Of a stretch of DNA of 64,000 bases, positions 3,249-59,482 are shown piece after piece. The DNA is taken from IMG/VR virus record IMGVR_UViG_3300024252_000004, positions 310,001-374,000 of that record; one strand, 5' to 3'. The notes beneath the pieces are model-generated. The model made no database searches, was not told where the DNA came from, and saw only the letters and a list, made by a program, of their open reading frames with translations. Each line of letters opens with the position of its first letter. Position 1 is the stretch's first letter. The position numbers were made by a program, and so were the translations under genes.

Positions 3249-3323
3249 ATGGCTTGGTATATATGGTTAATCATAGCGATATGTTGCCTCATACTAATCT
3301 GCAAACGGCCTCCGCACATTTGA
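3249..3323 (+). CDS. 24-aa hydrophobic peptide (MAWYIWLIIAICCLILICKRPPHI)
   Basis: GGAGG RBS 6 nt upstream; translated by hand. Confidence 0.5.
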   Translation: MAWYIWLIIAICCLILICKRPPHI

Positions 3324-3330
3324 GGACCCT

Positions 3331-3567
3331 ATGTCTATTTACGCTGTAATTTTAATTTTGGTTATGATTGGGCTTATCGCCGCAGGGATTAAATTCCTTC
3401 CAGGCTATATTCATAAGATCCAGATGAATGCAAGAAAAGTTGAGCTATTGGATCTTGAGATTGAAAAGAAAAGAAGCCAGCAGGCGGACGAGGAATTGAA
3501 TAGTTATCTCAGTGATGACGAGAGAGCCGAAATGCGCCGAAAAGCGGAGCAGGCACAAAGGAGTTAA
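3331..3567 (+). CDS. small single-pass membrane protein with coiled coil
   Basis: N-terminal hydrophobic helix; GAGGA RBS; TACTAAT 39 nt upstream. Confidence 0.7.
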   Translation: MSIYAVILILVMIGLIAAGIKFLPGYIHKIQMNARKVELLDLEIEKKRSQQADEELNSYLSDDERAEMRRKAEQAQRS

Positions 3568-9913: not shown

Positions 9914-9920
9914 TACTAAT
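9914..9920 (+). promoter_or_regulatory. promoter-like motif A (TACTAAT), putative late promoter
   Basis: TACTAAT in an AT-rich gap, 39 nt before ATG 9953. Confidence 0.65.
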
Positions 9921-9952
9921 ATAAAATTGATAAAACTGAAAAAGGAGTTTAA

Positions 9953-20335: not shown

Positions 20336-20369
20336 TGACTGCTCCTAAGCATAAAGGTTTTATTAGTAA

Positions 20370-21813: not shown

Positions 21814-21862
21814 TACTAATATCATGAAGCTCATGTGAATACCCAAATCTGGAGACTATCAC

Positions 21863-24578: not shown

Positions 24579-26180
24579 ATGGGAAAAGTTGTAAAGATTG
24601 GACCTGAAGCAAGAAAAGAAATGCTTCAAGGTGTAGATATTTTAGCAAACGCCGTTAAGGCCACTCTTGGTCCGCGAGGAAGAAACGTTGCTATCGAAAG
24701 GGAATGGGGTCACCCGCTTATTACAAAAGATGGTGTGACTGTAGCTCGACAGATCAGATTGGATGATAGAATTCAGAACATGGGAGCACAGTTGGTGCGT
24801 TCGGTTGCAGCCGCAGCAAATAGCGCGGCAGGAGACGGGACAACAACTGCAACTGTTCTCGCTCAGGCAATCTACTCCAAAGGCTTAGTTCTTGTAGACG
24901 AAGAGGGACTCAACCCTGTTCTTCTTAGACGCGGCATTGACCTTGCTGTGACAAAACTTTCAAGTAGACTGAAGGGCTTATCTGCATCTGTAAGCGATGA
25001 AGCAAGCATGAGAAGTGTTGCTGTAATCTCTGCAAATAATGATAAGGTTCTCGGTGCCAAAATCGCAGAAGCTATCGCGGCAGTTGGTCAGCACGGAGTC
25101 ATTTCCGTTGAGGAAGCGACTGGAAGATCAACTGAGGTGTTCTACTCGGAAGGTATCAAGCTCGATAAGGGATGGACCTCTGAGCATTTCGTGACAAATT
25201 CTGCAAGATTTACGGCAGAATTTGATGATTGTCTTATATTTCCTTATGATGGGGCGATTTCCAGCATCACTGATGTAAGGGAAATTTTTGAGGAATTAGC
25301 CGAGCAATCCAAACCCGTTCTTTTGGTTGTAAAGCAGATCACAGATGAAGCTATTGCTCATCTTGTCTACAACAAGATTCAGGGAAATATTAGAATCGCG
25401 GTAGTTCGTTCTCCTGGGTTTGGTGATTCGAGACGTGCATTCCTCGAAGACCTTGCCATTGTTTCTGGCGGAAAGATGTTCTGTGATAATGACGGAATCG
25501 GTCTTGACGGAGCAACAGTTGCTGATCTTGGGACCGCACGCAGGGTCATCGTAAGCCAGAACAGCACAACTATAATTGAAGGTGGGGCAGATCCCAAAGA
25601 TGTTGAGGCGAGAGCCATTCAGATTAAAGAGCAGCTTACTGCTGGTGGTCAACATGATTATCAGCTTGAGATTCTAAAAAGCAGACTTGCAAGAATCACT
25701 GGCTCGGCAGCGATTTTTAAGGTCGGCGGAAAATCTGAAGCTGAAATGAGAGAGAGAAAGGACAGAGTGGAAGATGCTATCAACGCTGTACGTTCAGCGC
25801 TTGAAGAAGGTGTAGTTCCCGGTGGTGGCTCCGCACTAATTCATGCCCTTCCAGTCCTTGACGAGATTGAGACAGATGGCCTTCTTCCTGAAGAGGTGGC
25901 CGGCATTGGAATTATCAGAGAGGCAGTTAAGGCCCCATTTTATCAGATTCTTGATAACGCCGGAGTCACTGGTGCTGATGATTTTGTTGAGCAGATTTTG
26001 AATTCTGATGAGCCAAGCGGTTATGATGCTCTTAATCTTGAGTTTGTAACTAACATGTTAGACAATGGGATTATGGATCCTTGTAAAGTTGTAAGAAGCT
26101 CTTTGGAGCATGCTGCATCAGCCAGTGGAACACTGCTGACGACAGAGGTTGCAATTTACGAAACTGAAACGGAGAGATAA
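24579..26180 (+). CDS. groEL: chaperonin GroEL
   Basis: TLGPRGRNV, ITKDGVTVA, GDGTTTATVLA, EGVVPGGG. Confidence 0.98.
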   Translation: MGKVVKIGPEARKEMLQGVDILANAVKATLGPRGRNVAIEREWGHPLITKDGVTVARQIRLDDRIQNMGAQLVRSVAAAANSAAGDGTTTATVLAQAIYSKGLVLVDEEGLNPVLLRRGIDLAVTKLSSRLKGLSASVSDEASMRSVAVISANNDKVLGAKIAEAIAAVGQHGVISVEEATGRSTEVFYSEGIKLDKGWTSEHFVTNSARFTAEFDDCLIFPYDGAISSITDVREIFEELAEQSKPVLLVVKQITDEAIAHLVYNKIQGNIRIAVVRSPGFGDSRRAFLEDLAIVSGGKMFCDNDGIGLDGATVADLGTARRVIVSQNSTTIIEGGADPKDVEARAIQIKEQLTAGGQHDYQLEILKSRLARITGSAAIFKVGGKSEAEMRERKDRVEDAINAVRSALEEGVVPGGGSALIHALPVLDEIETDGLLPEEVAGIGIIREAVKAPFYQILDNAGVTGADDFVEQILNSDEPSGYDALNLEFVTNMLDNGIMDPCKVVRSSLEHAASASGTLLTTEVAIYETETER

Positions 26181-26464
26181 TGGATGATTTTTTGCTGGTC
26201 AATGCAGGACTCAATCTTCAGAAGTTCGAGAACAATAAGCATTTCTCATTGGAAGAGCACCCTGAGATTATGGAAGCACTTAATGTATTTCCAAATGGGG
26301 AGATTTGCGGAATTCGACTTGAAGCAATCGAAGAGGTCTTAAACGACACAGAAGTTGACAACATTCGCAATGAACTCAAGGCAGCCCCAAAGCATGTAGA
26401 GATTAGATCAGCAAGAGATTTCTTAAAGGTCATAGCATACTACATTGATATTGAAGAATATTGA
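26180..26464 (+). CDS. hypothetical protein
   Basis: TAATG coupling to groEL; no GroES motif seen. Confidence 0.65.
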   Translation: MDDFLLVNAGLNLQKFENNKHFSLEEHPEIMEALNVFPNGEICGIRLEAIEEVLNDTEVDNIRNELKAAPKHVEIRSARDFLKVIAYYIDIEEY

Positions 26465-26479
26465 CCTTAGCAAATAGTT

Positions 26480-26515
26480 CAAAAGCCTGATAGCAATTTA
26501 GCTGTCGGGCTTTTG
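26480..26515. terminator. intrinsic (bidirectional-looking) terminator
   Basis: CAAAAGCCTGATAGC/GCTGTCGGGCTTTTG stem. Confidence 0.8.
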
Positions 26516-26553
26516 TCATTTCTAATAATATAGTTTGTTTGATTGAGGTGAAC

Positions 26554-28113
26554 GTGCGTAAGCTTGCAGACTTAGAAGTTACAGAGAAGACAGATCCTGC
26601 TACCGGAAATAAAATCCGTATTAGCACGACTGCTCGTCTTGCGTTGAGAATTATGTTTCCAAAGTTTACTGAAGAAAGGAATGCGAGACTAAATGATCGA
26701 ATGGCATTCATGTTCAGTAATTCAGCAGGCAACGTTGTTCACCGTTTCAAATTAGGGAACAAAGATACCGGAGCATGGCGCCCAGCGGAACCAGATTCTG
26801 GTGAACAGAATAATAGAGAAGTTGCTGAAATTAGGTCAGGCCCAGGCGGAGACTTTTTCTTCATTTCTGCTATTAGGCAGGGATACATTGATATCTTAAC
26901 ATTACAAGATAATTGGAAGCAGGGAAAGCCTAATCAAGGTGGATCAAAAGGTGCTGGCGCAGGAGCCGGTGATGGAGATGTATCTTTGGCGAGTCTGAAT
27001 ATCGACATGAGTATATTCGGAGCTACTAATAAAACGAATTTGGACAGAAACAGGAGACATAACATGTCAGCATTGCGCATTCTTGCAGATTTAGCAAACA
27101 AGTTGGACAGTTTTGGTGAGACCAAGGCTGCTGATGAAGTAACCAAGATGATAGAGAAGAGAGCTAGGTGGCCTTTTGGAAAGGCGGACGAAGAGGAAGA
27201 ATTTCCTGCTGCCCCTCCAGTCCCTAAGCCTCCTGTGTCTCCACAGTCTTCTCCATTTTTAAGAGGAACAATTCCTCCTGCGCCGCCTATGAACCCTGTT
27301 GTTACGACCAGTCCGGAAGGTTTCAGCGATGCTCCAGTTGCTGAACCAGCAGAGTCAAGAGTAGTTGGAAAGCTTGGTCCGATTAGGCCAGACAAAGATC
27401 CTTACTCTTACGAATTCCTTCCTTCCGAAGGTGTCTTCAGAGTTTCCAGCTACACTTATGGGCCAGGAGCGGCCCCTAACCCAAGGGCAGAGAGAGCCGT
27501 TGGCGCACATATTACAAGAGAAAATGCAAGAGCTTGGGCTGTATTGTCCGAGTATGTTCCAGAAGGGGACAAGTCCCCTTCCGAAGGGAGACATCTTCTC
27601 ACAGAGTCTACAGGTGATCCTGCAAGAGACTGGAAAGAAGCACAGCTTCAGTTTGCTGGCTGGGTTAACTCAGGACACTTTGGTACTGAACTTCAGAAGA
27701 AGTTTAGACTTGCAGACCCGGGTATGCCAATGCGTCAGCTTATGGATGCAGAGCTTTCTCCAGAGAGTGCGGGATTCCTTGTTGAAAGGTTTGAGGCAAT
27801 GATTGCTGGAAATGTTCTTTCGGATCTAAAAGATCCTGAGACTCTCCTCAGATATGCTCTTGAGCTTCAGAACTATGCTCATCTTGCTAACAGGGCAAGG
27901 GCAGTAGGTCAGCAGTCAATGAGAGAATCTGAGACGGTCATGTCTCCGGGTGGATACCCATCATCATACCCATCATCATCAGAGGCTGAAGATTTCACAC
28001 TGGCATCTATGGACTCAATAGAGGATATAAGAAAGAAGGCATCTGCTAACGTAGATAGGCTTGCAGCACTTTTCACAGTCCCAGGTGGAAGCGGTCCTTT
28101 CGGAAGGGACTGA
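26554..28113 (+). CDS. putative late/virion protein; nested in-frame start at 27064
   Basis: GAGGTG RBS then GTG (MRKLA); TTCTAATAATA at 26520; internal TACTAAT 27024 + AGGAG + ATG 27064. Confidence 0.8.
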   Translation: MRKLADLEVTEKTDPATGNKIRISTTARLALRIMFPKFTEERNARLNDRMAFMFSNSAGNVVHRFKLGNKDTGAWRPAEPDSGEQNNREVAEIRSGPGGDFFFISAIRQGYIDILTLQDNWKQGKPNQGGSKGAGAGAGDGDVSLASLNIDMSIFGATNKTNLDRNRRHNMSALRILADLANKLDSFGETKAADEVTKMIEKRARWPFGKADEEEEFPAAPPVPKPPVSPQSSPFLRGTIPPAPPMNPVVTTSPEGFSDAPVAEPAESRVVGKLGPIRPDKDPYSYEFLPSEGVFRVSSYTYGPGAAPNPRAERAVGAHITRENARAWAVLSEYVPEGDKSPSEGRHLLTESTGDPARDWKEAQLQFAGWVNSGHFGTELQKKFRLADPGMPMRQLMDAELSPESAGFLVERFEAMIAGNVLSDLKDPETLLRYALELQNYAHLANRARAVGQQSMRESETVMSPGGYPSSYPSSSEAEDFTLASMDSIEDIRKKASANVDRLAALFTVPGGSGPFGRD

Positions 28114-29690
28114 TGGAGAAAAAGACGCCGGGGTTTTCATTAGATGATTTAGTTCCATCTGAAGAAGCTGCGTCAGGCATGCACGTTCCTGTAGGGGAGA
28201 TGATGTTTGCAATCCCGAATAAAGCAGATGATGAAGAGATTGAGGAGGAAGGTATGGAAAAGGAAGCCTTAGGCTTGACCAGTATGCCTCAATCTTTATA
28301 TGGCGGCGAAGTTCTTGACCTGCCAGGAAGTCCTCAGCCTTCTGGACTCAGCAGAGAACAGGGCGAGGATGAAGAGACTGAATTTTTTGGAGCTAAAGAG
28401 GAGGGCGTAGATCTTCCTCCAGAACATTACAAAACTCAGAAGAAACAGGGAATCTCAGAAGATGATGAAACAGATGAAGAATTCTTTGACTTCTTATTTA
28501 CTAACAAAAGTCACAACTTCCTGAGAGAGGAATCAAACATGAGACACTTAATTGAGAAATTAGCCGAAGGGTTAGATAAGGTTGGAGAAAAGGACGCAGC
28601 ACTTGTTGCATTGGCACTTACCGACGATAGAATAAACTATTCGGAGTCTGTAAAACCTCCTGCACCTGATAATTCTGCCCCTGATTCGAGAAAAGATGAA
28701 ATCTATAAAAAATTAGTATATGATTTTGGGATGATTACAGATTGGCTTTATCGCCCAGACGGTGAATTTACACCCAACAAATTAGAGAAAATGTGGGAAA
28801 TGCTCAAGCAGCGCAAGCCTGCGCTGAGTGATGACAGAAAAGCGGAATTTATGAGTCTTGCAAAAGAGTGGGGGATGCAAGATCGTTATGGGGAAAGTTC
28901 TGCGGAAGAAGTTTCGACCGGCGAAGGAGTGCTTGCAAAGCCAGCAGAGCAGCCGTCTGGCGGAGTAACTCCGGTAGCTAAGCCAAGATCCGGCTGGGAA
29001 GGTTACTTCGCAAATGGTGGACCAAAAGGCATGAAAGCCGCCTGGGAAGCATGGGTGGCAGCCAACCCTAATCAGGGATATGATGCGTCTTTCTTGTCAT
29101 GGGTTAAGTGGTACAGGAAGCAGGTTACAGATAGAACCATTCCGTCTGGAGGTAATGTAGATGCTGTTCTTAGACTATTAGGAGGGGCTGCTCCCGCAGC
29201 GCCAGCCGCAAAAACAGATGAGGCAGCTAAGCCTGCTGAGGATACTGAGCCACCTATTGCAGAAGAGGGTAAGCCTCCAAGAGAGGCAATGGAAGAATAC
29301 TTCAGAGCTATTTCTTCTAAGACAAGAGAAGCGAGAATCGCAGGTCCGTTAAGACTAAGAAACGCAAGAGTCAGAAGAAGAATCAGAAGACTCGGAGATC
29401 CAGCAGCGGCAGTAGAAGCTGTTCTCTCTTTCAGAGGCGGAGGCGATGTTGAGAAGGGTCTTGCGCTTTATGATAGTTATGATCAGACACAGACACCTGA
29501 AGGAACAGAAGAGCGCGGTGGCAAAACCGTATCAACCTACAAGATGTCTGAGTTCCAAAACAAGGCAGTCAGTGATATCCTTACTCTGAAAGTAAGGGAT
29601 TATAGAGCTGGCAGAGGACGTACCAGAAGAAGCGTGGCTTTTGAGGACAGACAAGATCAGCTTCTAAAGATGGCAGCAGAAAATTCCTAA
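28113..29690 (+). CDS. putative late/virion protein; nested in-frame start at 28539
   Basis: TGATG coupling; acidic N-terminus; internal TACTAAC 28499 + GAGGA + ATG 28539. Confidence 0.8.
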   Translation: MEKKTPGFSLDDLVPSEEAASGMHVPVGEMMFAIPNKADDEEIEEEGMEKEALGLTSMPQSLYGGEVLDLPGSPQPSGLSREQGEDEETEFFGAKEEGVDLPPEHYKTQKKQGISEDDETDEEFFDFLFTNKSHNFLREESNMRHLIEKLAEGLDKVGEKDAALVALALTDDRINYSESVKPPAPDNSAPDSRKDEIYKKLVYDFGMITDWLYRPDGEFTPNKLEKMWEMLKQRKPALSDDRKAEFMSLAKEWGMQDRYGESSAEEVSTGEGVLAKPAEQPSGGVTPVAKPRSGWEGYFANGGPKGMKAAWEAWVAANPNQGYDASFLSWVKWYRKQVTDRTIPSGGNVDAVLRLLGGAAPAAPAAKTDEAAKPAEDTEPPIAEEGKPPREAMEEYFRAISSKTREARIAGPLRLRNARVRRRIRRLGDPAAAVEAVLSFRGGGDVEKGLALYDSYDQTQTPEGTEERGGKTVSTYKMSEFQNKAVSDILTLKVRDYRAGRGRTRRSVAFEDRQDQLLKMAAENS

Positions 29691-49472: not shown

Positions 49473-49515
49473 ATCTACTAATAAAAGTCGTTTCCTAGTT
49501 GAGGATCAATAAAAA

Positions 49516-51193: not shown

Positions 51194-51961
51194 ATGGACG
51201 AGTTAACAGAAGAATTGAACGAAGAGCTGAATAAGATTGAGAACGAAATAGAGGTTGCTAAAGAAGGGAAGAAAGCTTCTTTCGAGGGCATAGTTAGAGT
51301 ATATGACGAGACGTTCTATGTGAACACCGAAACCGGTGTTGGTTTGGATAGCGTGCTAAAGAAGATTGAGCCGCTCTTGAATAAGATGTCTTCCAAGACA
51401 TATATTGCTGGATATACCTTTGAGGATATCAAACAAGAATTAACCATTATGGCGATCCAGGGGGTCTGTTCTTACAACCCTGCACGAGGAACAAAGCTTA
51501 GTTCATTCCTTCAGACTCATCTTAAGAATAAGCTTATCTCTAAGTTAAGAAGCGTTAATAAAATGTCCAATGATTCTTTTGCGCTATATGAGAAGAAGGG
51601 TTCTAATGTTGGTGGCGGTAAGATCAGAAAGGTAAGGGAAGAGATTCTGTTTAGTGCCTGTACCCCAGATAGTGTTGTAGACCCATCTATGATGTTCGAG
51701 AATACTGTCGCAGAGGAAGAGGGACTGTACGGAAAGACTGGACCATCGTTTGCTGATAAGGATTTTCAGCTTGCGCTTGAAAGTCTTGAGGGTGAAATTG
51801 ATGAAGACACTATCACTATCATGAAGCTCATCTATTACGAAGATTACCCAATTAAAAAGGCAGCAGCAGTTGTAGGATTGACGGGATGGGCCGCAAGTAT
51901 GCGACTCAAGAAGCTTACTGAGAACGAGTGCTTCATGGATGCCTTCGGAGATATGGTATAA
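51194..51961 (+). CDS. phage RNA polymerase sigma factor (sigma70 regions 2 and 4)
   Basis: FEDIKQEL..YNPARGTKLSSFL..LKNKL; C-terminal HTH YYEDYPIKKAAAVVGLT..RLKKL. Confidence 0.8.
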   Translation: MDELTEELNEELNKIENEIEVAKEGKKASFEGIVRVYDETFYVNTETGVGLDSVLKKIEPLLNKMSSKTYIAGYTFEDIKQELTIMAIQGVCSYNPARGTKLSSFLQTHLKNKLISKLRSVNKMSNDSFALYEKKGSNVGGGKIRKVREEILFSACTPDSVVDPSMMFENTVAEEEGLYGKTGPSFADKDFQLALESLEGEIDEDTITIMKLIYYEDYPIKKAAAVVGLTGWAASMRLKKLTENECFMDAFGDMV

Positions 51962-53398: not shown

Positions 53399-56300
53399 AT
53401 GCACAAAATTGCTAATGAAGTTACTTTTGCAAATCAGCAAATGGTTGAAAGAATCTTTTCTCGCATGAGAGACGGAGAGTACGCAGATACGGTAGCTACT
53501 CTTTCAGCCATTCATGACCTAATGTCGCAGCAAGCAGACCTTAGCGTCATTGATGCGACCAAGGAAGTTATTGGAGACAATAACTTCGTTCAGGGATTTG
53601 CACGATACATTACACATTATATTGGAGAAGGACAGTTCAGGGGAGTACCTTTTGAAAGTCTGTCAGAATCTCTATATGCATTCAGAGCACCTGCGGCTAT
53701 CCCTGAAGGGGAACAGGTTCCGGAGGCGGCGACTACAGAGCCGGCAGAAGAAGAAGGCTTAAGCAAGCCTGACTTTGCAGAAGACCTTGAGAGAATCAAG
53801 ACGCAAAAATACCCTGAAGCTGAGAGGGAAAGGGTTATGATGTCCTTTAAGAACCTCGGCCTTCATTTAAAGAAGCTTCACGAAGCTACAGAAGAAGGTG
53901 ATGTTGAGCTTTATGCTGAGCAAATCAGGGGAACTATTGAGTTCTTAGATTCTTTAGTTAAGTATGCCCCTCTTGACAAGAAGGATGAATCGGATCCGGA
54001 TAGCAAGAAGAAAGGGCCTAGCAAAAAAAGGGGATCAAAAGTTGTTAAAGCTGGAGAGACGAATCTTTCAGAAGAAGATGTCGCAAACAGAATGGACACA
54101 AGGGTTCGTGTACAAGAGATTCCTGCAACGTTGAGCATGGAGACTTTGGGGTCTCATGCAATTGTAAGGGGAATCGAAATTGTTTCCGAGACAGGTTTGA
54201 CCACGGAAACCATCCGCCAGACAGAGGAGTCTCTTGTTCAGGTTATGAACAATGCAAAGAAAGCTTTTGTTCATTTTGAACAACTTACTTCTGGAATGAT
54301 TGAACGGCATCGACAGACCAGAACAAAAGGTAAGGGCTCAGACAAAGCTGATTCAAAGGTTAGTAATAGCGTACTTATCGATTTTAACAATTTGATTTAC
54401 GCAATCAAGGGTGTTGATCTTTTTGTTAAGAAAGCAATTAGGGCAGCAATTATGGATCCAGAGAATTCAATTTCTGGAGTGGAACTTGCTGGACTTAGAG
54501 ATAAATTGCTTGTGCCACAATTTGTTGCGGATAAGGCGTTCTTCAGTGAGACAATTGTGCTTGGATTATCGTACCTTGCAGTTAGAGATGTAGGTCTGCT
54601 ATACGCCGGTATAAAAACATGGGGAGACTTCGAAGGCGACACATACTCTTCAGTTGTTGAGGACTATGGAAAGGATCTTCATGGCGGACGAAGCTTAGAA
54701 GATGATACTACTGAATACATTTTTAAACTTATGTGGTCAAAGTTCAGAAGGATGCTCTCTGCGACATCAACAGATCAGGCAGTAAACGATTCAGATCCGA
54801 TGAAGAACTTCATTAGTAATGTTTTATTCCAGAAAGGCTTTGTTGCGCAAAACCTTAGAAGAGATCTTCGTTCATCTGAAAGCAGCAAGGTTAACATTGC
54901 TAAATGCCCCACATGTACTCGTCCAATTAAATGGTCCGGCAAACCCCTTAAGGATTTGGATCTAATCCAGTCTAGAGGCGCATACCTTCCTATGTATTCT
55001 TTTGTAGGAAAGCGCTTAAAAGATGATGGCCGAAAAACATCATTTATCATAACTGAGAGACACTTAGAGGAGGGAGGTCCTTATCCTGCTCCGGATTCTT
55101 CAAAAATTGGAAACGCTTCTCAGATGAATGAGACTAAAGCTGATGGCTCTTTGACGAACAAAGCTAAGCTCCTAAAGAGGACTCGTTCTGTCATTGATAG
55201 CTACGAAGGTTCCAAAACATGGTCAGAAATCCTTGAGTTACTTTATTCCAATGAGCCTGCCGAGCATGAAGAAGGACTTCAGAGAAGAGCCGGAGCATTA
55301 GCTCATCTTGGCGCGGTACGGTTACGGCACAAAAGAAAGGGAGGCGCAGGCGTCCCAGTCATGACGGACATTAGTACGATCATGTATGCTTGCCCATTCC
55401 AGAAGGAAGAGGCAGAAACGGGATTTTCGAAAAGCGACATATTCAGTCCAAAAGATGAGATTACAAAAATTAAAACAGAGCTTCAGTATCCTGACGATCC
55501 AGAGACTCAAGCCGCTGTTGGTGCAATTTTTGACAAAATTGATGAACTTAATCTGTCATTTGCAGAAGCTGTGATGAACGATCCGGATATCGAGGCTCTC
55601 ATTCGTGGAGAACTCGAAGAAGCATTCGATCAGGCTTATGATCTTGCAGGCGTAGTTAGGGGCGAAGATGAAGCAGAAGAAGAGGGAGAGGTTGGTCCTG
55701 CATTTTCTCCATCTGGCTGTGGCTTGAAGTTGTCGCCTTACGAAGATGATCCGTCAAAGATGACTTATGGTTCCAATTCTAATCCAAATGTGTTACAGTA
55801 TACATGGAACCCTCGTGAATTTGATGAAACACAAGAAGCTGCGGCACAGAAGAGCCTGTCTGGAGGATACAAGTTCTCTAAGACGATCTTTAGGTGTCCG
55901 GCAAGAATCGTTGATCCATCATCCACAGATCTTATAAAATATAAAAACGTTGCAATTCCGAAGTCTGGACCGTCTGGCATTGGGAGTGGAGCCTATGTTC
56001 CGCCTACAAACGCATCAGGATATGCGGCTTATGATGAGATCGAAAATGGGACTTTCTCTTACCTTGTATGTGGCGCCTCAACTTCCCTCTCCGCTTTTGA
56101 TAAAACTTCTGGAGGAGAAGGCTCTATCTATACCATTTTAAGAAACCTTCTTAATGTAATTAAGGGTTCCAGCGCAACAGGGGAGAGTGTTACTAACTCC
56201 CAGAAGAATGCAGCAAAAAACATAATCGACTTCCTTATTCTTGAAGGAATTGACTACATGGACCTCATCAAAGCATTAGAGGTTGCAGACGCTCCAGAGC

Positions 56301-59300
56301 CAGAACTTGCTACAACCGCCCGTTTGAAGAAATGCAGAATAAAAAAGATAGAAAAAATGCTCGTTACAGCAGCAAGACAGCTTCCGTCTCAGTTCTCTGA
56401 GATTGAAGAGCTTGTTCTTGTGTGTCCTCACGGTCATAGGTTTTCACTTAAGCAGTCTGTAGGGTTCAGCGAGACCCACGTTTCTGTAAGAATGTCGGGC
56501 GCCAATAAAGGATATGCTGCGGCCAAAGAACTTTATGCTTTGACCGGAATTGAAAGCCTTGAGGCTGCAAAAAGGATTGGAGTTATTGTTAGAGCTGTTG
56601 ACGAAGAAGAGTTGAAGACTTTTGAGGATATTGGTAGCGAGAATCACAGTGTTGAAGAGTTAGCATTTGTAATCCCTGATGAGTTGGGGAACCCAGTCAG
56701 ATGGAAGTTTTCACCCCGTATTACTGATCTTATCAAGAAGAATGCATTCTCTGAGTACCCTGGTGCTGGACAGGAAGATATTCCTTCATCAATCGAGTAT
56801 TCAAAAGTGAAATTTGGTGGGCAATTTTTGGCGGACCTTATCAAGGAGGGGGCTGGTTCAGGGAGTGAGGAAGAAATCGCTGCTGGAAAACAAGCTGCTG
56901 CGGATTATCGCAGAGATGAAGATGCCGGAAGCGAAACTCTTTCCAGAGCAATCGAGGGCATTGACTCTAAGGACCTCGCGAGCAACATTGAGGCTTTGGC
57001 AAGATCCCTTAGGGGCGCTCTTAAGATTGTAATCACTTGGAATAATAGAGCTATTGAGCCTGAGTTTTTCAACAAAGTTGTTGCAAACTCGGATTTCTCA
57101 ATCGAAGGAGTACCCGAAGAAATTCTTAGTATCGATGGATTATTCTACACTGAAGATGACGGTTTGGACTCAGCAGCACTGAGCGCCGTATTAACAGCTT
57201 TCGCCCCAAGGCTCAAGACCTATATCGTAGCGACAAATGCTTTCCAAGGAGAGGACTACGTTGGTTCAGCAACAGCTTTAGCTACAGCGGCATTGGTTGA
57301 TGCTGTAGTTCAAGTTGCAAATGATACGGAACACGATATCGAATTCGATCTCGATCTCGACTCTGACAATACAGAATTTGAGTTTGTCTATGCAAAACTT
57401 GCTTCATTCTTTGAAGATTATAGAGCAGATTTTCAGAAGCTAATTCCTTACATCACTCATAGTGATGAAAGATATGTGGCTAAAGCGCAAGAGATTGCCT
57501 CTAAGACACCAGTTCTTTCAATTTTTTACACGATTGCATCTTACCGCACCGAGAAAAAAGGTCAGGAGAGAACAAGACTTCGTGAAGCATACGGAAAGAA
57601 AATATTCTTGGTCGCATACGCAAGATATCTTGCAAATGCAATCGCAGTTGTTTATAATGAATGCATGGCGCCAGGAAGATGTATTCCAGGGGCATACATC
57701 GGATATAACATTGGAGTAGATCTGTCTACAACTGACAAAGTATTAGCTTTGACTAGTGGTGATCTCAGAATAATTGAAGATAACCCGAATCTTCGGGGTG
57801 CAAATCACGGGATTGTTCTCAGAAATGTTGTAGCAGCATATAATGGTATTATCGCAAGAATGTCTATTGCAAGAAATATGGCAATTTCTCCAATTGGTTT
57901 GGCCGAAGCTAAGAAAGAACTTCTTAGGCAGTCCGGAACATCTGGTGACCCGTTGGCTCATGCAGTTTTCTCTTCTGCTTTCCCAATGCAAACTGTTGAT
58001 TTCGGAATGGAGAACCTTACTTATGGTTCAGGGAATATTCCAAATGCATTCGGCATTAGGGCTGGCAAAGGAAGAGCTTTACCTTCTGAGCTTCATGAGT
58101 CAGAAGAAGAAGGTGTTGAACCGGCAGTATTGCCGCCAGCAATGCTACCGGTAACAAGGAGGGACGGCTCCCCTGTTCTTGACAGAGCGGGGCAGCAGAA
58201 AGTCATTCCAGCATATCTTCATCCAGATTCAGGTTTCGATAGTTCGAAATTCCAGATTGGCATGTGTATGGGTAAGACAGGCAAATCCCTTACTTGGCCT
58301 CTCGATCATGCAAGTGATTTCGTAGGGTTCCCGCTTCCATTCAACAGAGATAAAACTGCCACAGTAACAAGAGCGGCAGATGCTGCCGTTTATGATTTCA
58401 GATTCGTAATCGATATCGAAGGGGTACCTCAAGATATTTCTTTCCTCTTTAGAAGAGGAAGAATGACAAAGGAGGAAGATGGGGAAAGAAAAAATAAGTA
58501 TCTCCCAATTTTGCGAGAACTTTATTCTAAACTTGATACTTTTGAAGATCAAAGAGGTGATGCACTTGAGGATGCTAAGAATAGCGAAGAAGAGGATGCA
58601 ATCAATAATCATTTTGATGACGCTATTAGAGAAACTCAGTCTGCTCTAAAGCAGATTCCTCTATTCATAAAAGCAGGAAAGTCTTATGTGAGAAATAAAG
58701 CTTCCCTCGGTTCTTCTGAGCCAAAATGGATTTCCGAAGCTCATCCGACAGCACTTCTTGTAGCTCCGAATGAGGCTCTCAACCTTATCAAAAATGTTGA
58801 GAGATTCGCTGGCATGCTTTCTGTTGCTCCAAACCAAGAACTATTAGAAAGGTTTGTAATTCAGGTGTATGGACTTGGGGTTGTTAGGGATATTGTTCAA
58901 GAAGCACAGAACAAGTACACAGACGAAATTGCCGAAATTAGGGCTGAAGATATTTTCGACACTCACATCGATGGAAACACTTCCTCTGGGAAAAAGATGC
59001 TTTCGCATATCAATAGTAGCCTTTCAAAGGTTTACTCTGAGCATCTTGGGCAGTACTATGATCTCATTCCTTCTGGCGCAGACGGAACCGGTTCTAACTT
59101 GGTATTGCTCGAAGCGTCTGTACCTTCGTTTAAGGAGAATAGAAGATCCGAATCCGGATTTGAAGTCGTCCCTGATGAAGGATTAGGAACACCACCTTCT
59201 ATTGGCAAACTGGCATCAAGAATGAATAAGAATAATTCAATCTCAGATTTCTTTGGACGTGGCGCTGAAGGTGATGTTGGCATGACTTATTTGCAGAAGG

Positions 59301-59482
59301 CTCAAGAGTCTATGATCGAATACGTTAAGGGGCATGCATCCGGGGAGCTTGGCTCCCACACAACGGAGGCGTCATTGAAGACCGAATATTTGAAGAAGAT
59401 CGCTAAGAGGCGCAAGTCTTGGGAGCGTATGATGTTAACGATGGGTGAGGCCGACATAGAGGTCGATGACCTCGTCGGCTGA
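53399..59482 (+). CDS. giant (2027 aa) putative late protein with dispersed Cys knuckles
   Basis: Uninterrupted ORF; TACTAAT at 53344; CPTC, CPF, GCG, CPA, VCG, CPHGH. Confidence 0.85.
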   Translation: MHKIANEVTFANQQMVERIFSRMRDGEYADTVATLSAIHDLMSQQADLSVIDATKEVIGDNNFVQGFARYITHYIGEGQFRGVPFESLSESLYAFRAPAAIPEGEQVPEAATTEPAEEEGLSKPDFAEDLERIKTQKYPEAERERVMMSFKNLGLHLKKLHEATEEGDVELYAEQIRGTIEFLDSLVKYAPLDKKDESDPDSKKKGPSKKRGSKVVKAGETNLSEEDVANRMDTRVRVQEIPATLSMETLGSHAIVRGIEIVSETGLTTETIRQTEESLVQVMNNAKKAFVHFEQLTSGMIERHRQTRTKGKGSDKADSKVSNSVLIDFNNLIYAIKGVDLFVKKAIRAAIMDPENSISGVELAGLRDKLLVPQFVADKAFFSETIVLGLSYLAVRDVGLLYAGIKTWGDFEGDTYSSVVEDYGKDLHGGRSLEDDTTEYIFKLMWSKFRRMLSATSTDQAVNDSDPMKNFISNVLFQKGFVAQNLRRDLRSSESSKVNIAKCPTCTRPIKWSGKPLKDLDLIQSRGAYLPMYSFVGKRLKDDGRKTSFIITERHLEEGGPYPAPDSSKIGNASQMNETKADGSLTNKAKLLKRTRSVIDSYEGSKTWSEILELLYSNEPAEHEEGLQRRAGALAHLGAVRLRHKRKGGAGVPVMTDISTIMYACPFQKEEAETGFSKSDIFSPKDEITKIKTELQYPDDPETQAAVGAIFDKIDELNLSFAEAVMNDPDIEALIRGELEEAFDQAYDLAGVVRGEDEAEEEGEVGPAFSPSGCGLKLSPYEDDPSKMTYGSNSNPNVLQYTWNPREFDETQEAAAQKSLSGGYKFSKTIFRCPARIVDPSSTDLIKYKNVAIPKSGPSGIGSGAYVPPTNASGYAAYDEIENGTFSYLVCGASTSLSAFDKTSGGEGSIYTILRNLLNVIKGSSATGESVTNSQKNAAKNIIDFLILEGIDYMDLIKALEVADAPEPELATTARLKKCRIKKIEKMLVTAARQLPSQFSEIEELVLVCPHGHRFSLKQSVGFSETHVSVRMSGANKGYAAAKELYALTGIESLEAAKRIGVIVRAVDEEELKTFEDIGSENHSVEELAFVIPDELGNPVRWKFSPRITDLIKKNAFSEYPGAGQEDIPSSIEYSKVKFGGQFLADLIKEGAGSGSEEEIAAGKQAAADYRRDEDAGSETLSRAIEGIDSKDLASNIEALARSLRGALKIVITWNNRAIEPEFFNKVVANSDFSIEGVPEEILSIDGLFYTEDDGLDSAALSAVLTAFAPRLKTYIVATNAFQGEDYVGSATALATAALVDAVVQVANDTEHDIEFDLDLDSDNTEFEFVYAKLASFFEDYRADFQKLIPYITHSDERYVAKAQEIASKTPVLSIFYTIASYRTEKKGQERTRLREAYGKKIFLVAYARYLANAIAVVYNECMAPGRCIPGAYIGYNIGVDLSTTDKVLALTSGDLRIIEDNPNLRGANHGIVLRNVVAAYNGIIARMSIARNMAISPIGLAEAKKELLRQSGTSGDPLAHAVFSSAFPMQTVDFGMENLTYGSGNIPNAFGIRAGKGRALPSELHESEEEGVEPAVLPPAMLPVTRRDGSPVLDRAGQQKVIPAYLHPDSGFDSSKFQIGMCMGKTGKSLTWPLDHASDFVGFPLPFNRDKTATVTRAADAAVYDFRFVIDIEGVPQDISFLFRRGRMTKEEDGERKNKYLPILRELYSKLDTFEDQRGDALEDAKNSEEEDAINNHFDDAIRETQSALKQIPLFIKAGKSYVRNKASLGSSEPKWISEAHPTALLVAPNEALNLIKNVERFAGMLSVAPNQELLERFVIQVYGLGVVRDIVQEAQNKYTDEIAEIRAEDIFDTHIDGNTSSGKKMLSHINSSLSKVYSEHLGQYYDLIPSGADGTGSNLVLLEASVPSFKENRRSESGFEVVPDEGLGTPPSIGKLASRMNKNNSISDFFGRGAEGDVGMTYLQKAQESMIEYVKGHASGELGSHTTEASLKTEYLKKIAKRRKSWERMMLTMGEADIEVDDLVG

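What the first reader, a model, noticed from the sequence alone, without database searches (positions are those of the whole stretch)
26554..29690. Two adjacent genes each hide a complete in-frame nested gene start (promoter motif + RBS + ATG) that exposes a shared N-terminal helix
Seen: inside ORF 26554-28113, TACTAATAAAA (27024) is followed by AGGAG and an in-frame ATG exactly 40 nt later (27064, MSALRILADLANKLDSFGETKAADEV). Inside ORF 28113-29690, TACTAACAAAA (28499) is followed by GAGGA and an in-frame ATG again 40 nt later (28539, MRHLIEKLAEGLDKVGEKDAA). The same motif sits 39-40 nt before ordinary gene starts at 3331, 9953 and 49516. These intergenic-like stretches stay open in frame, so each locus could give a long and a short isoform. 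Inference: programmed isoform pairs of late proteins, where only the short form begins with the putative targeting helix.
Basis: partly seen in the sequence, partly recalled or inferred. Interest (0 to 1): 0.78.

Follow-up and report, generated by a model that had tools for sequence, protein, structure and literature searches.

The report
Two conserved in-frame nested phage genes
Two neighbouring genes of an uncultured 395-kb marine phage each contain a conserved promoter-like motif, ribosome-binding site and in-frame ATG, so each probably makes a long and a short protein, a known kind of gene-within-gene arrangement seen here twice in a row.

Summary
TACTAATAAAA (27024) and TACTAACAAAA (28499) each lie 40 nt before an in-frame ATG (27064, 28539), and a Shine-Dalgarno core ends 7 nt before each ATG. 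Both sites sit inside the open ORFs 26554-28113 and 28113-29690.

It is not chance.
- TACTAATA is the most enriched upstream word in this 395-kb seawater phage. 13 of its 15 copies lie 18-62 nt before gene starts.
- In nine related lineages per gene (about 25-60% protein identity), both ORFs stay open and the internal Met is invariant.
- An SD is nearly always present, and the motif is kept in 7 of 9 lineages.
- Synonymous-codon identity peaks exactly at the junction: 0.88 and 0.81, against 0.46 gene-wide.
- About 20 distant homologues are stand-alone genes that begin with the same helix.

Best reading: each locus gives a long isoform and a short, helix-first isoform, from an embedded promoter and/or internal ribosome entry.

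Not shown: transcription or translation (no RNA data were available), "late" timing, and any "targeting" role for the helix. Protein function is unknown. Gene 1's N-domain weakly resembles the RelE/ParE fold.

This is a new member of a known kind (compare T4 gene 49 and the Rpn genes-within-genes).

The parts
26480..26515 (+). Terminator-like hairpin (15 pairs plus a T-rich tail) after the 94-aa gene, just upstream of gene 1
   Evidence: The same hairpin is present in the closest relative, L007.
26520..26530 (+). TTCTAATAATA, a one-mismatch copy of the motif 34 nt before GTG 26554. Its promoter status is doubtful.
   Evidence: Seen and identical in L007. However, TTCTAATA is not enriched upstream of genes genome-wide (0 of 20 copies).
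26554..28113 (+). Gene 1, long form (519 aa from GTG 26554, preceded by GAGGTG). The mechanical longest ORF starts at TTG 26539.
   Evidence: P0001 is the same 519-aa protein, found on 7 contigs.
26569..26916 (+). Gene 1 N-domain (residues 6-121), present only in the long form. It is conserved and confidently folded, with a weak resemblance to the RelE/ParE fold.
   Evidence: many invariant columns; pLDDT about 80; Z 5.3-6.3 over whole toxin chains.
27024..27034 (+). Embedded promoter-like motif TACTAATAAAA, read as codons Thr-Asn-Lys within a disordered linker
   Evidence: AGCTACTAATAAA is identical at the nucleotide level in 6 lineages. Synonymous identity here is 0.88 against 0.455 gene-wide. 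Linker pLDDT is 23-36.
27052..27056 (+). Embedded Shine-Dalgarno AGGAG, encoded by Arg-Arg codons AGG AGA, 7 nt before the ATG
   Evidence: An SD-like sequence is present in 9 of 9 lineages.
27064..28113 (+). Gene 1, predicted short form (349 aa). It starts with the helix (residues 171-204, nt 27064-27165).
   Evidence: M171 is invariant in 7 aligned sequences and in 9 of 9 lineages. The helix is in the model.
28113..29690 (+). Gene 2, long form (525 aa). Its ATG overlaps the TGA of gene 1 by one base, consistent with translational coupling. The acidic N-part (residues 1-135) is the most conserved segment but is predicted to lack regular structure.
28499..28509 (+). Embedded promoter-like motif TACTAACAAAA, read as Thr-Asn-Lys after the conserved FFDFLF
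   Evidence: Synonymous identity here is 0.81 against 0.469 gene-wide, the top window of the gene.
28527..28531 (+). Embedded Shine-Dalgarno GAGGA, 7 nt before the ATG
28539..29690 (+). Gene 2, predicted short form (383 aa). It starts with the helix (residues 143-156, nt 28539-28580), followed by a Trp-rich domain and a C-terminal domain.
   Evidence: P0006 is this 383-aa form, as called on another contig. M143 is invariant and nearly invariant over 31 sequences. Helix pLDDT is 85-92.
3292..3302 (+). Ordinary intergenic copy of the motif, 39 nt before ATG 3331
9914..9924 (+). Ordinary copy of the motif, 39 nt before ATG 9953
20358..20368 (-). Ordinary copy of the motif, 33 nt before GTG 20335 on the minus strand
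21814..21824 (+). Ordinary copy of the motif, 49 nt before ATG 21863. The orthologous intergenic site is conserved in relatives.
   Evidence: The same site occurs at L007:1900, L008:784, L009:1880 and L010:387.
49476..49486 (+). Ordinary copy of the motif, 40 nt before ATG 49516, heading a gene run that includes the sigma-like gene
51194..51961 (+). The only sigma-70-family gene found in the genome (ECF-like, regions 2 and 4). It is a candidate reader of the motif; this is inference only.

Best explanation
Each of the two adjacent genes is a gene-within-a-gene. The full ORF encodes a long protein: N-terminal module, disordered linker, helix, then C-terminal domains. Written into the codons of the linker is a complete start cassette. 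It consists of the phage's own compact, -10-only upstream element (TACTAATA), an SD 7 nt before an invariant in-frame ATG, and that ATG, 40 nt from the motif. A transcript starting just downstream of the motif, and/or ribosomes entering internally on the longer mRNA, would yield a short protein. That short protein begins exactly at the shared amphipathic helix and lacks the N-terminal module. Stand-alone homologues start with this same helix. The cassette therefore looks like the retained promoter, SD and start codon of a helix-first gene that sits fused in frame behind an upstream module, with both products kept by selection.

Shown: the sequence anatomy, the conservation, the synonymous constraint, and the motif's genome-wide position before gene starts.

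Inferred: that the motif is a promoter, that a phage sigma-like factor reads it, that both isoforms are made, and what they do.
For: 1. Anatomy and spacing are identical at both sites.
2. The motif is a genuine upstream element. It gives the top-enriched 6-mers before starts. 13 of 15 TACTAATA copies lie 18-62 nt before starts, 12 of 15 are intergenic although only 10% of the genome is intergenic, and there is no -35 partner. Orthologous intergenic copies are conserved in relatives.
3. The constraint is at nucleic-acid level. AGCTACTAATAAA, the 40-nt spacing, AGGAG and ATGTCAGC are kept at synonymous positions in 6 lineages whose proteins are 40-60% identical. Synonymous-codon identity is 0.88 at 27025-27060 and 0.81 at 28497-28523, against 0.455 and 0.469 gene-wide. 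Each is the top window of its gene.
4. In 9 lineages per family, the frame is open in 9/9 and 9/9 and the internal Met is present in 9/9 and 9/9. An SD-like sequence is present in 9/9 and 8/9 (the ninth has AAGGTG). The motif is present in 7/9 and 7/9, and in L011 it has moved to 85 nt upstream yet stays inside the ORF.
5. In the wider superfamily the Met at the helix start is present in about 28 of 33 fused proteins and is nearly invariant in a 31-sequence alignment. About 20 stand-alone proteins start at that residue.
6. The SDs are as strong as those of true starts.
7. The N-parts are under strong purifying selection, so the long forms are real.
8. The cassette lies in a predicted disordered linker, where codon choice is free.
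9. Independent assemblies agree.
Against: - There is no transcript, 5'-end, ribosome or peptide evidence. No RNA run could be listed.
- Promoter status rests only on positional enrichment. The motif could instead be an RNA processing site.
- The window's second site has C at position 7 (TACTAACA), a variant not seen before any other predicted gene start here.
- Two lineages per family lack the motif (L010 and L030 for gene 1; L007 and L029 for gene 2) while keeping the SD and ATG. The promoter is therefore dispensable, or the SD and ATG are the essential part.
- The conserved Met sits at a hydrophobic helix position. The exceptions are Y, I, W and F, so part of its conservation could be structural.
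- The only sigma-like gene is ECF-like, with a region 4 that would normally read a -35 element, and none is seen.
Confidence: 0.72

Rival explanations
1. Internal translation start only. The SD and ATG are used on the long mRNA to make the short isoform. TACTAATA is not a promoter here; it is an RNA-level signal (for example an endonuclease processing site that frees the downstream SD) or serves another purpose.
For: The SD and ATG are more widely conserved than the motif: 9/9 against 7/9 in each family. The motif has no -35 partner. No TSS data exist.
Against: The motif is conserved at synonymous sites together with exact spacing. It heads gene runs in intergenic regions across the clade. In L011 it relocated but stayed upstream of the internal ATG. 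A single 8-bp -10-type element without a -35 is how T4 late promoters look (PMC2988020).
Confidence: 0.15
2. Protein-level motif. Thr-Asn-Lys, about 10 residues and then Met is a conserved peptide signal (for example a protease cleavage or docking site). The resemblance to gene starts is incidental, and only the long proteins are made.
For: TNK and Met are invariant as amino acids in family 1. The Met is at a hydrophobic helix position. Relatives of gene 1 carry an HEMGH (zinc-protease-like) module just upstream.
Against: Synonymous positions are frozen (GCT ACT AAT AAA and AGG AGA in all six lineages), which a peptide signal does not require. The same DNA word sits before ordinary genes whose proteins share nothing. 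The peptide between TNK and Met is not conserved, whereas the DNA spacing is. Stand-alone homologues begin at the Met.
Confidence: 0.06
3. Artefact or recent accident: an assembly error or a fresh loss of a stop codon fused two genes, so the 'nested start' is simply the normal start of a separate downstream gene.
For: One gene caller did call the 383-aa short form of gene 2 as the gene (P0006). The junctions look intergenic (AT-rich, motif, SD).
Against: The frame is open in 9 of 9 lineages for both genes, at down to about 25-35% protein identity. Contigs from four other seawater runs are identical at both junctions, and the only indels seen are multiples of 3 elsewhere. The 519-aa protein occurs on 7 contigs.
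Confidence: 0.02

Closest known systems
Phage T4 gene 49 (endonuclease VII): two nested in-frame proteins (Barth, Powell, Trupin and Mosig 1988, Genetics 120:329). I found it only in the reference list of PMC6854812; the details come from my own knowledge because the paper was not held.
   Same: A phage gene gives a long and a short in-frame product. The short one starts at an internal SD and AUG, served by a compact phage promoter close to the internal start. The promoter class is an 8-bp -10-only element (T4 late promoters, PMC2988020).
   Different: The proteins are unrelated. The motif is TACTAATA, not TATAAATA. Here the arrangement occurs twice in adjacent genes with a homologous helix after each start. 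Nothing here has been shown experimentally.
Rpn genes-within-genes of bacteria (RpnL/RpnS; Zhong et al., bioRxiv 10.1101/2023.05.02.539157)
   Same: An internal promoter plus an internal translation start inside one ORF yields a separately made C-terminal protein that contains an oligomerisation helix. The short product regulates the long one.
   Different: Rpn is a PD-(D/E)XK nuclease toxin-antitoxin defence system of bacteria. Here the host is a phage, the proteins have no detectable family, and no antagonism between the isoforms has been shown.
Classical in-frame overlapping phage genes: phiX174 A/A*, f1 gII/gX (PMC6854812), lambda C/Nu3 and T7 4A/4B (own knowledge)
   Same: One ORF gives two products that share a C-terminus, and the short form lacks the N-terminal (often enzymatic) module.
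   Different: In most of these, internal ribosome entry occurs on the same mRNA without a dedicated internal promoter. The gene contexts (replication, head assembly) also differ from this chaperonin and nucleotide-metabolism neighbourhood.
T4-type late promoters read by gp55 (PMC2988020); ATAAATA late motif of jumbo phage CBB (PMC5259590)
   Same: A single AT-rich 8-bp element with no -35, placed a few tens of nt before start codons and repeated before many phage genes.
   Different: The sequence differs at two positions. No gp55-specific homologue was shown; the only sigma-like protein is ECF-like with regions 2 and 4. The temporal class is unknown.

Membership tests
In-frame nested gene (gene-within-gene) with internal promoter and internal translation start | One continuous ORF with an in-frame internal start codon preceded by a functional-looking SD | tested here: met
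   SD strength is -7.4 and -8.3 kcal/mol, and the frame is open for 170 and 142 codons upstream.
In-frame nested gene (gene-within-gene) with internal promoter and internal translation start | The internal start signals are conserved in homologues beyond what the protein sequence requires | tested here: met
   (synonymous identity 0.88 and 0.81 against about 0.46).
In-frame nested gene (gene-within-gene) with internal promoter and internal translation start | A promoter inside the ORF that drives a shorter transcript | tested here: inconclusive
   The motif is the phage's most enriched upstream element and is conserved in place. No transcript data exist.
In-frame nested gene (gene-within-gene) with internal promoter and internal translation start | Two protein products are actually made | not testable with these tools
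   The phage is uncultured and no RNA or proteome data could be reached.
T4-type late promoter | A single roughly 8-bp AT-rich -10-type element with no -35 element | tested here: met
   information content is confined to TACTAATA(a), and the 40 nt upstream carry none.
T4-type late promoter | Consensus TATAAATA | tested here: not met
   The consensus here is TACTAATA.
T4-type late promoter | A gp55-like sigma (domain 2 only) together with gp33 and a sliding-clamp activator | tested here: inconclusive
   One sigma-70-family gene was found (window 51194-51958). It matches the ECF superfamily model over regions 2 and 4 at E 1e-7, below the cut-off. I did not search for gp33 or gp45.
RelE/ParE toxin fold (gene 1 N-domain) | Fold match to solved RelE/ParE/YoeB/YafQ structures | tested here: inconclusive
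   Residues 17-123 align to whole toxin chains at Z 5.3-6.3. The Foldseek E-value is 0.2-0.7. This is below the level at which the tool's notes advise trust.
RelE/ParE toxin fold (gene 1 N-domain) | Sequence-family membership | tested here: not met
   No Pfam, PHROG, NCBIfam or PADLOC hit.
Protease/scaffold nested pair (lambda C/Nu3 type) | Location in the head-assembly module next to the portal and major capsid genes | tested here: not met
   The neighbours are a Cpn60-like chaperonin, a 94-aa ORF, adenylosuccinate synthase, a DHH-family protein and IMPDH, and this synteny is conserved.
Protease/scaffold nested pair (lambda C/Nu3 type) | A protease domain confined to the long form | tested here: inconclusive
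   Relatives of gene 1 carry an HEMGH-containing module upstream of the nested start, but it matches no Pfam family. The window's own gene 1 and its closest relative lack it.

The most novel reading that the evidence does not exclude
The long/short pairs may be self-regulating, or toxin-antitoxin-like, gene-within-gene systems of a jumbo phage. In this reading the long form of gene 1 carries a RelE/ParE-like effector domain (in relatives also a zinc-protease-like module), and the long form of gene 2 carries a conserved acidic module of short binding motifs. The separately expressed helix-first short forms would titrate, dock or time these modules through the shared helix. The promoter-SD-Met-helix unit would then be a portable expression-and-docking cassette that this superfamily of marine viral proteins has repeatedly fused behind new N-terminal modules.
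Probability: 0.1. Interest if true: 0.75.

Novelty: new member of a known kind. Interest (0 to 1): 0.45.

Why it matters
Gene callers report one protein per ORF. Here they disagree: 519 aa was called for gene 1 but 383 aa for gene 2 on another contig. This locus shows that in uncultured jumbo phages a second, shorter product can be recognised from sequence alone. The signs are a phage-specific upstream motif and SD written into codons, a sharp local peak of synonymous constraint, an invariant internal Met, and stand-alone homologues that begin at that Met.

The analysis also gives a candidate promoter consensus (TACTAATA) for a clade of marine 0.4-Mb phages. It defines a widespread, unnamed N-terminal helix module (about 20 clusters of helix-first proteins). 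If both isoforms are made, the two ORFan families become tractable, because the N-terminal modules can be studied as regulated additions to a common helix-first core.

Tried and rejected
- Similarity to cultured phages: no DNA or protein match in the phage collection.
- Family libraries (Pfam, PHROGs, NCBIfam, PADLOC): no hits for either protein or their parts.
- ESM Atlas look-alikes: only weak, uninformative rows.
- Fold searches. Gene 2 matched nothing. Gene 1 gave only the weak RelE/ParE lead plus generic helical matches.
- Complex prediction of the two short forms returned 'no answer'. It is evidence neither for nor against binding.
- RNA evidence: no RNA run could be listed. Read laying could only be used on DNA contigs.
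- IMG/VR scans found only identical copies of the window's phage.
- The T4 genome review and the T4 gene 49 paper were not held.
- 'The helix is a general targeting signal of this phage': rejected. It occurs only in these two ORFs.
- TTCTAATAATA at 26520 as a promoter for the long form: that variant is not enriched before genes, so I make no claim.
- Recoding or an alternative genetic code: rejected. The ORFs have no internal stops to explain.
- A -1 frameshift into the TAA TAA hidden in the motif (which would give an N-part-only product): considered, but I saw no slippery heptamer just upstream at either site in the sequence, so I did not pursue it.
- Multisubunit phage RNAP as the reader of the motif: no Pfam Rpb1 or Rpb2 hits, although very divergent enzymes could be missed.
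Full report
WHAT IS THERE. The window is bases 310001-374000 of a 395,127-bp virus record with 43.8% GC. Near-identical DNA occurs in about 20 seawater and marine metagenome runs. TACTAATAAAA lies at 27024, AGGAG at 27052-27056 and an ATG at 27064. TACTAACAAAA lies at 28499, GAGGA at 28527-28531 and an ATG at 28539. Each ATG is 40 nt from its motif and 7 nt from the end of its SD core. Both ATGs are in frame inside the ORFs 26554-28113 (519 aa from GTG) and 28113-29690 (525 aa). The second ORF's ATG overlaps the first ORF's TGA by one base.

IS THE MOTIF REAL? In the whole genome, TACTAA, ACTAAT and CTAATA are the three most enriched 6-mers at -60..-20 of predicted starts, about 6-fold. Of 15 TACTAATA copies, 13 lie 18-62 nt before a predicted start, a zone that is 3.1% of sequence space. 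Twelve are intergenic, although only 10% of the genome is intergenic, and a third-order Markov model expects 7.6 copies in all. Information content is confined to TACTAATA(a), with no -35-like partner. Further ordinary copies sit at 20368(-), 21814 and 53344. Genes downstream of the motif include an endolysin, two HNH endonucleases and very large ORFs. One copy heads a gene run that leads to the terminase. At ordinary copies the reading frame of the downstream gene closes 0-12 codons upstream of the start (40 codons at one site). At the two sites in question it stays open for 190 and 160 codons. The two SDs pair with the anti-SD at -7.4 and -8.3 kcal/mol. That places them in the top 3% and 2% of 1,286 internal in-frame ATGs and in the top quartile of true starts.

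RELATIVES. Both proteins are ORFans to Pfam, PHROGs, NCBIfam, PADLOC and cultured phages. Metagenomic homologues exist. I fetched their DNA as loci L007-L014, L029 and L030. Synteny is conserved: Cpn60-like chaperonin, a 94-aa ORF, gene 1, gene 2, adenylosuccinate synthase, then a DHH-family gene. In nine lineages per gene the ORF is continuous across the junction and the internal Met is present (9/9 and 9/9). An SD-like sequence precedes it in 9/9 and 8/9, and the ninth has AAGGTG. TACTAA[TC]A is present in 7/9 and 7/9. In family 1 the spacing is 40 nt in six lineages and 43 nt in L029. In family 2 it is 40-49 nt. In L011 the canonical copy is lost, but another TACTAATAAT lies 85 nt upstream, still inside the ORF.

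In family 1, the block AGCTACTAATAAA, then 40-nt spacing, (A/T)AGGAG and ATGTCAGC is the same at the nucleotide level, including third codon positions. The proteins themselves are 40-60% identical. Measured over all same-amino-acid pairs, synonymous-codon identity is 0.88 at 27025-27060 against 0.455 for the gene. It is 0.81 at 28497-28523 against 0.469. In each case this is the highest window of the gene. That is the signature of a nucleic-acid signal, not a peptide signal.

THE LONG FORMS ARE REAL TOO. The N-part of gene 2 (residues 1-128) holds most of that family's invariant columns. The N-domain of gene 1 is conserved and folds confidently (residues 6-121, pLDDT about 80). The cassette of gene 1 lies in a predicted disordered linker (residues 122-172, pLDDT 23-36). 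Independent contigs from four other runs are identical at both junctions. They differ only by four SNPs and two in-frame indels elsewhere, and the 519-aa protein occurs on 7 contigs. Assembly error and recent fusion are therefore excluded.

THE SHARED HELIX. BLASTP finds the junction and helix as the only similarity between the two proteins, and not significantly on its own (E 0.87). An HMM of the helix built from both families hits only these two ORFs in the genome, at E 5e-13 and 4e-10. A profile search of family 2 against 1.8 billion representatives found 108 proteins. About 20 of them are 200-320-aa proteins that begin with a closely related helix, followed by the Trp-rich domain of gene 2. 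One contig carries two adjacent genes that both start with it. Among about 33 fused homologues at 20-40% identity, the residue at the start of the helix is Met in about 28 and Y, I, W or F in the rest. It is one of only ten columns that are invariant or at least 90% conserved in a 31-sequence alignment. So the nested ATG corresponds to the start codon of stand-alone family members.

MECHANISM (inferred). Each locus gives a long form and a helix-first short form. The short mRNA would start a few nucleotides after the embedded TACTAATA. Ribosomes may also enter at the embedded SD on the long mRNA. By analogy with T4 late promoters, which are a single 8-bp -10-type box with no -35 read by a sigma domain-2-like protein (PMC2988020), a phage factor probably reads the motif. 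The genome encodes one sigma-70-family protein (window 51194-51958), and I found no multisubunit RNAP. That protein is ECF-like with a region 4, so the assignment is tentative. I rate a functional nucleic-acid signal at the junction at about 0.9, internal initiation at about 0.8 and promoter identity at about 0.65. 'Late' timing and a 'targeting' role for the helix remain untested.

FUNCTION. Function is unknown. Gene 1's N-domain aligns over whole RelE/ParE/YoeB/YafQ chains at Z 5.3-6.3 and Foldseek E about 0.2. This is a lead only. Relatives insert an HEMGH-containing module between that domain and the cassette, or start with it. Gene 2's model has no fold match. A complex prediction of the two short forms gave no answer.

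COMPARISON AND NOVELTY. In-frame nested genes are known. Examples are T4 gene 49 (cited in PMC6854812), phiX174 A/A* and f1 gII/gX, and bacterial Rpn genes-within-genes, which have an internal promoter and an internal start. This case is a new member of that kind. Its particular points are that it occurs twice in adjacent genes behind a homologous promoter-SD-Met-helix cassette, that it is conserved across a clade of uncultured marine jumbo phages, and that it is detectable purely by synonymous constraint. I score interest as moderate (0.45). The most novel reading not excluded is a self-regulating or toxin-antitoxin-like isoform system built on a portable cassette, with probability about 0.1.

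Noticed in passing
window 56191-56260: A possible third nested start lies inside the 2027-aa ORF 53399-59482. TACTAACT is followed 67 nt later by GAAGGAA and an in-frame ATG, with 953 codons open upstream. The motif is weaker and the spacing longer than at the two studied sites, so it may be chance.
   Followed up: no
window 51194-51961: This is the only sigma-70-family gene found in the 395-kb genome (Sigma70_r2 26.8 bits; ECF superfamily model E 1e-7, covering regions 2 and 4). It lies in a gene run headed by an exact copy of the motif at 49476.
   Followed up: partly
L008:6001-7956, L009:6001-7905, L011:3381-5015, L014:190-1815, L029:2487-4001, L030:2625-4001: Relatives of gene 1 carry an extra module of about 150 aa with an HEMGH (zinc-metalloprotease-like) motif just upstream of the nested start. 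L029 and L030 begin with this module and lack the RelE-like N-domain. The window's gene and L007 lack the module. It matches no Pfam family.
   Followed up: partly
L029:6004-7389 and L030:5513-6556: In the more distant syntenic relatives, a gene with a Gad2 (PF26128, anti-Gabija) hit is inserted directly after gene 2. This hints that the neighbourhood may hold counter-defence or host-takeover genes.
   Followed up: no
window 24579-26464: A phage-encoded Cpn60/GroEL-like chaperonin (533 aa) is followed by a conserved 94-aa ORF with no family hit. They lie immediately upstream of the two genes and are syntenic in all relatives.
   Followed up: no
L026:2251-3126: An unrelated marine viral contig (37% GC) has two adjacent genes, of 62 aa and 214 aa, that both start with the same conserved helix. 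The 62-aa product is little more than the helix.
   Followed up: partly
window 28595-28634: Population variants in one seawater run (X12) are a 6-nt and a 3-nt in-frame insertion and one SNP just after the helix of gene 2. Three further SNPs in gene 1 (27247, 27292, 27330) fall in its Pro-rich disordered stretch.
   Followed up: no
genome 230844-231506 and 252827-253456 (L020, L022): Two paralogous HNH endonuclease genes are each preceded by the TACTAA motif at 34-36 nt. They are possibly mobile genes that carry the phage's own promoter type.
   Followed up: no
window 29358-29381: A second peak of synonymous-codon identity in gene 2 (0.80) falls over the Arg-rich RVRRRIRRLG segment. It may reflect Arg codon bias or another embedded signal.
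   Followed up: no
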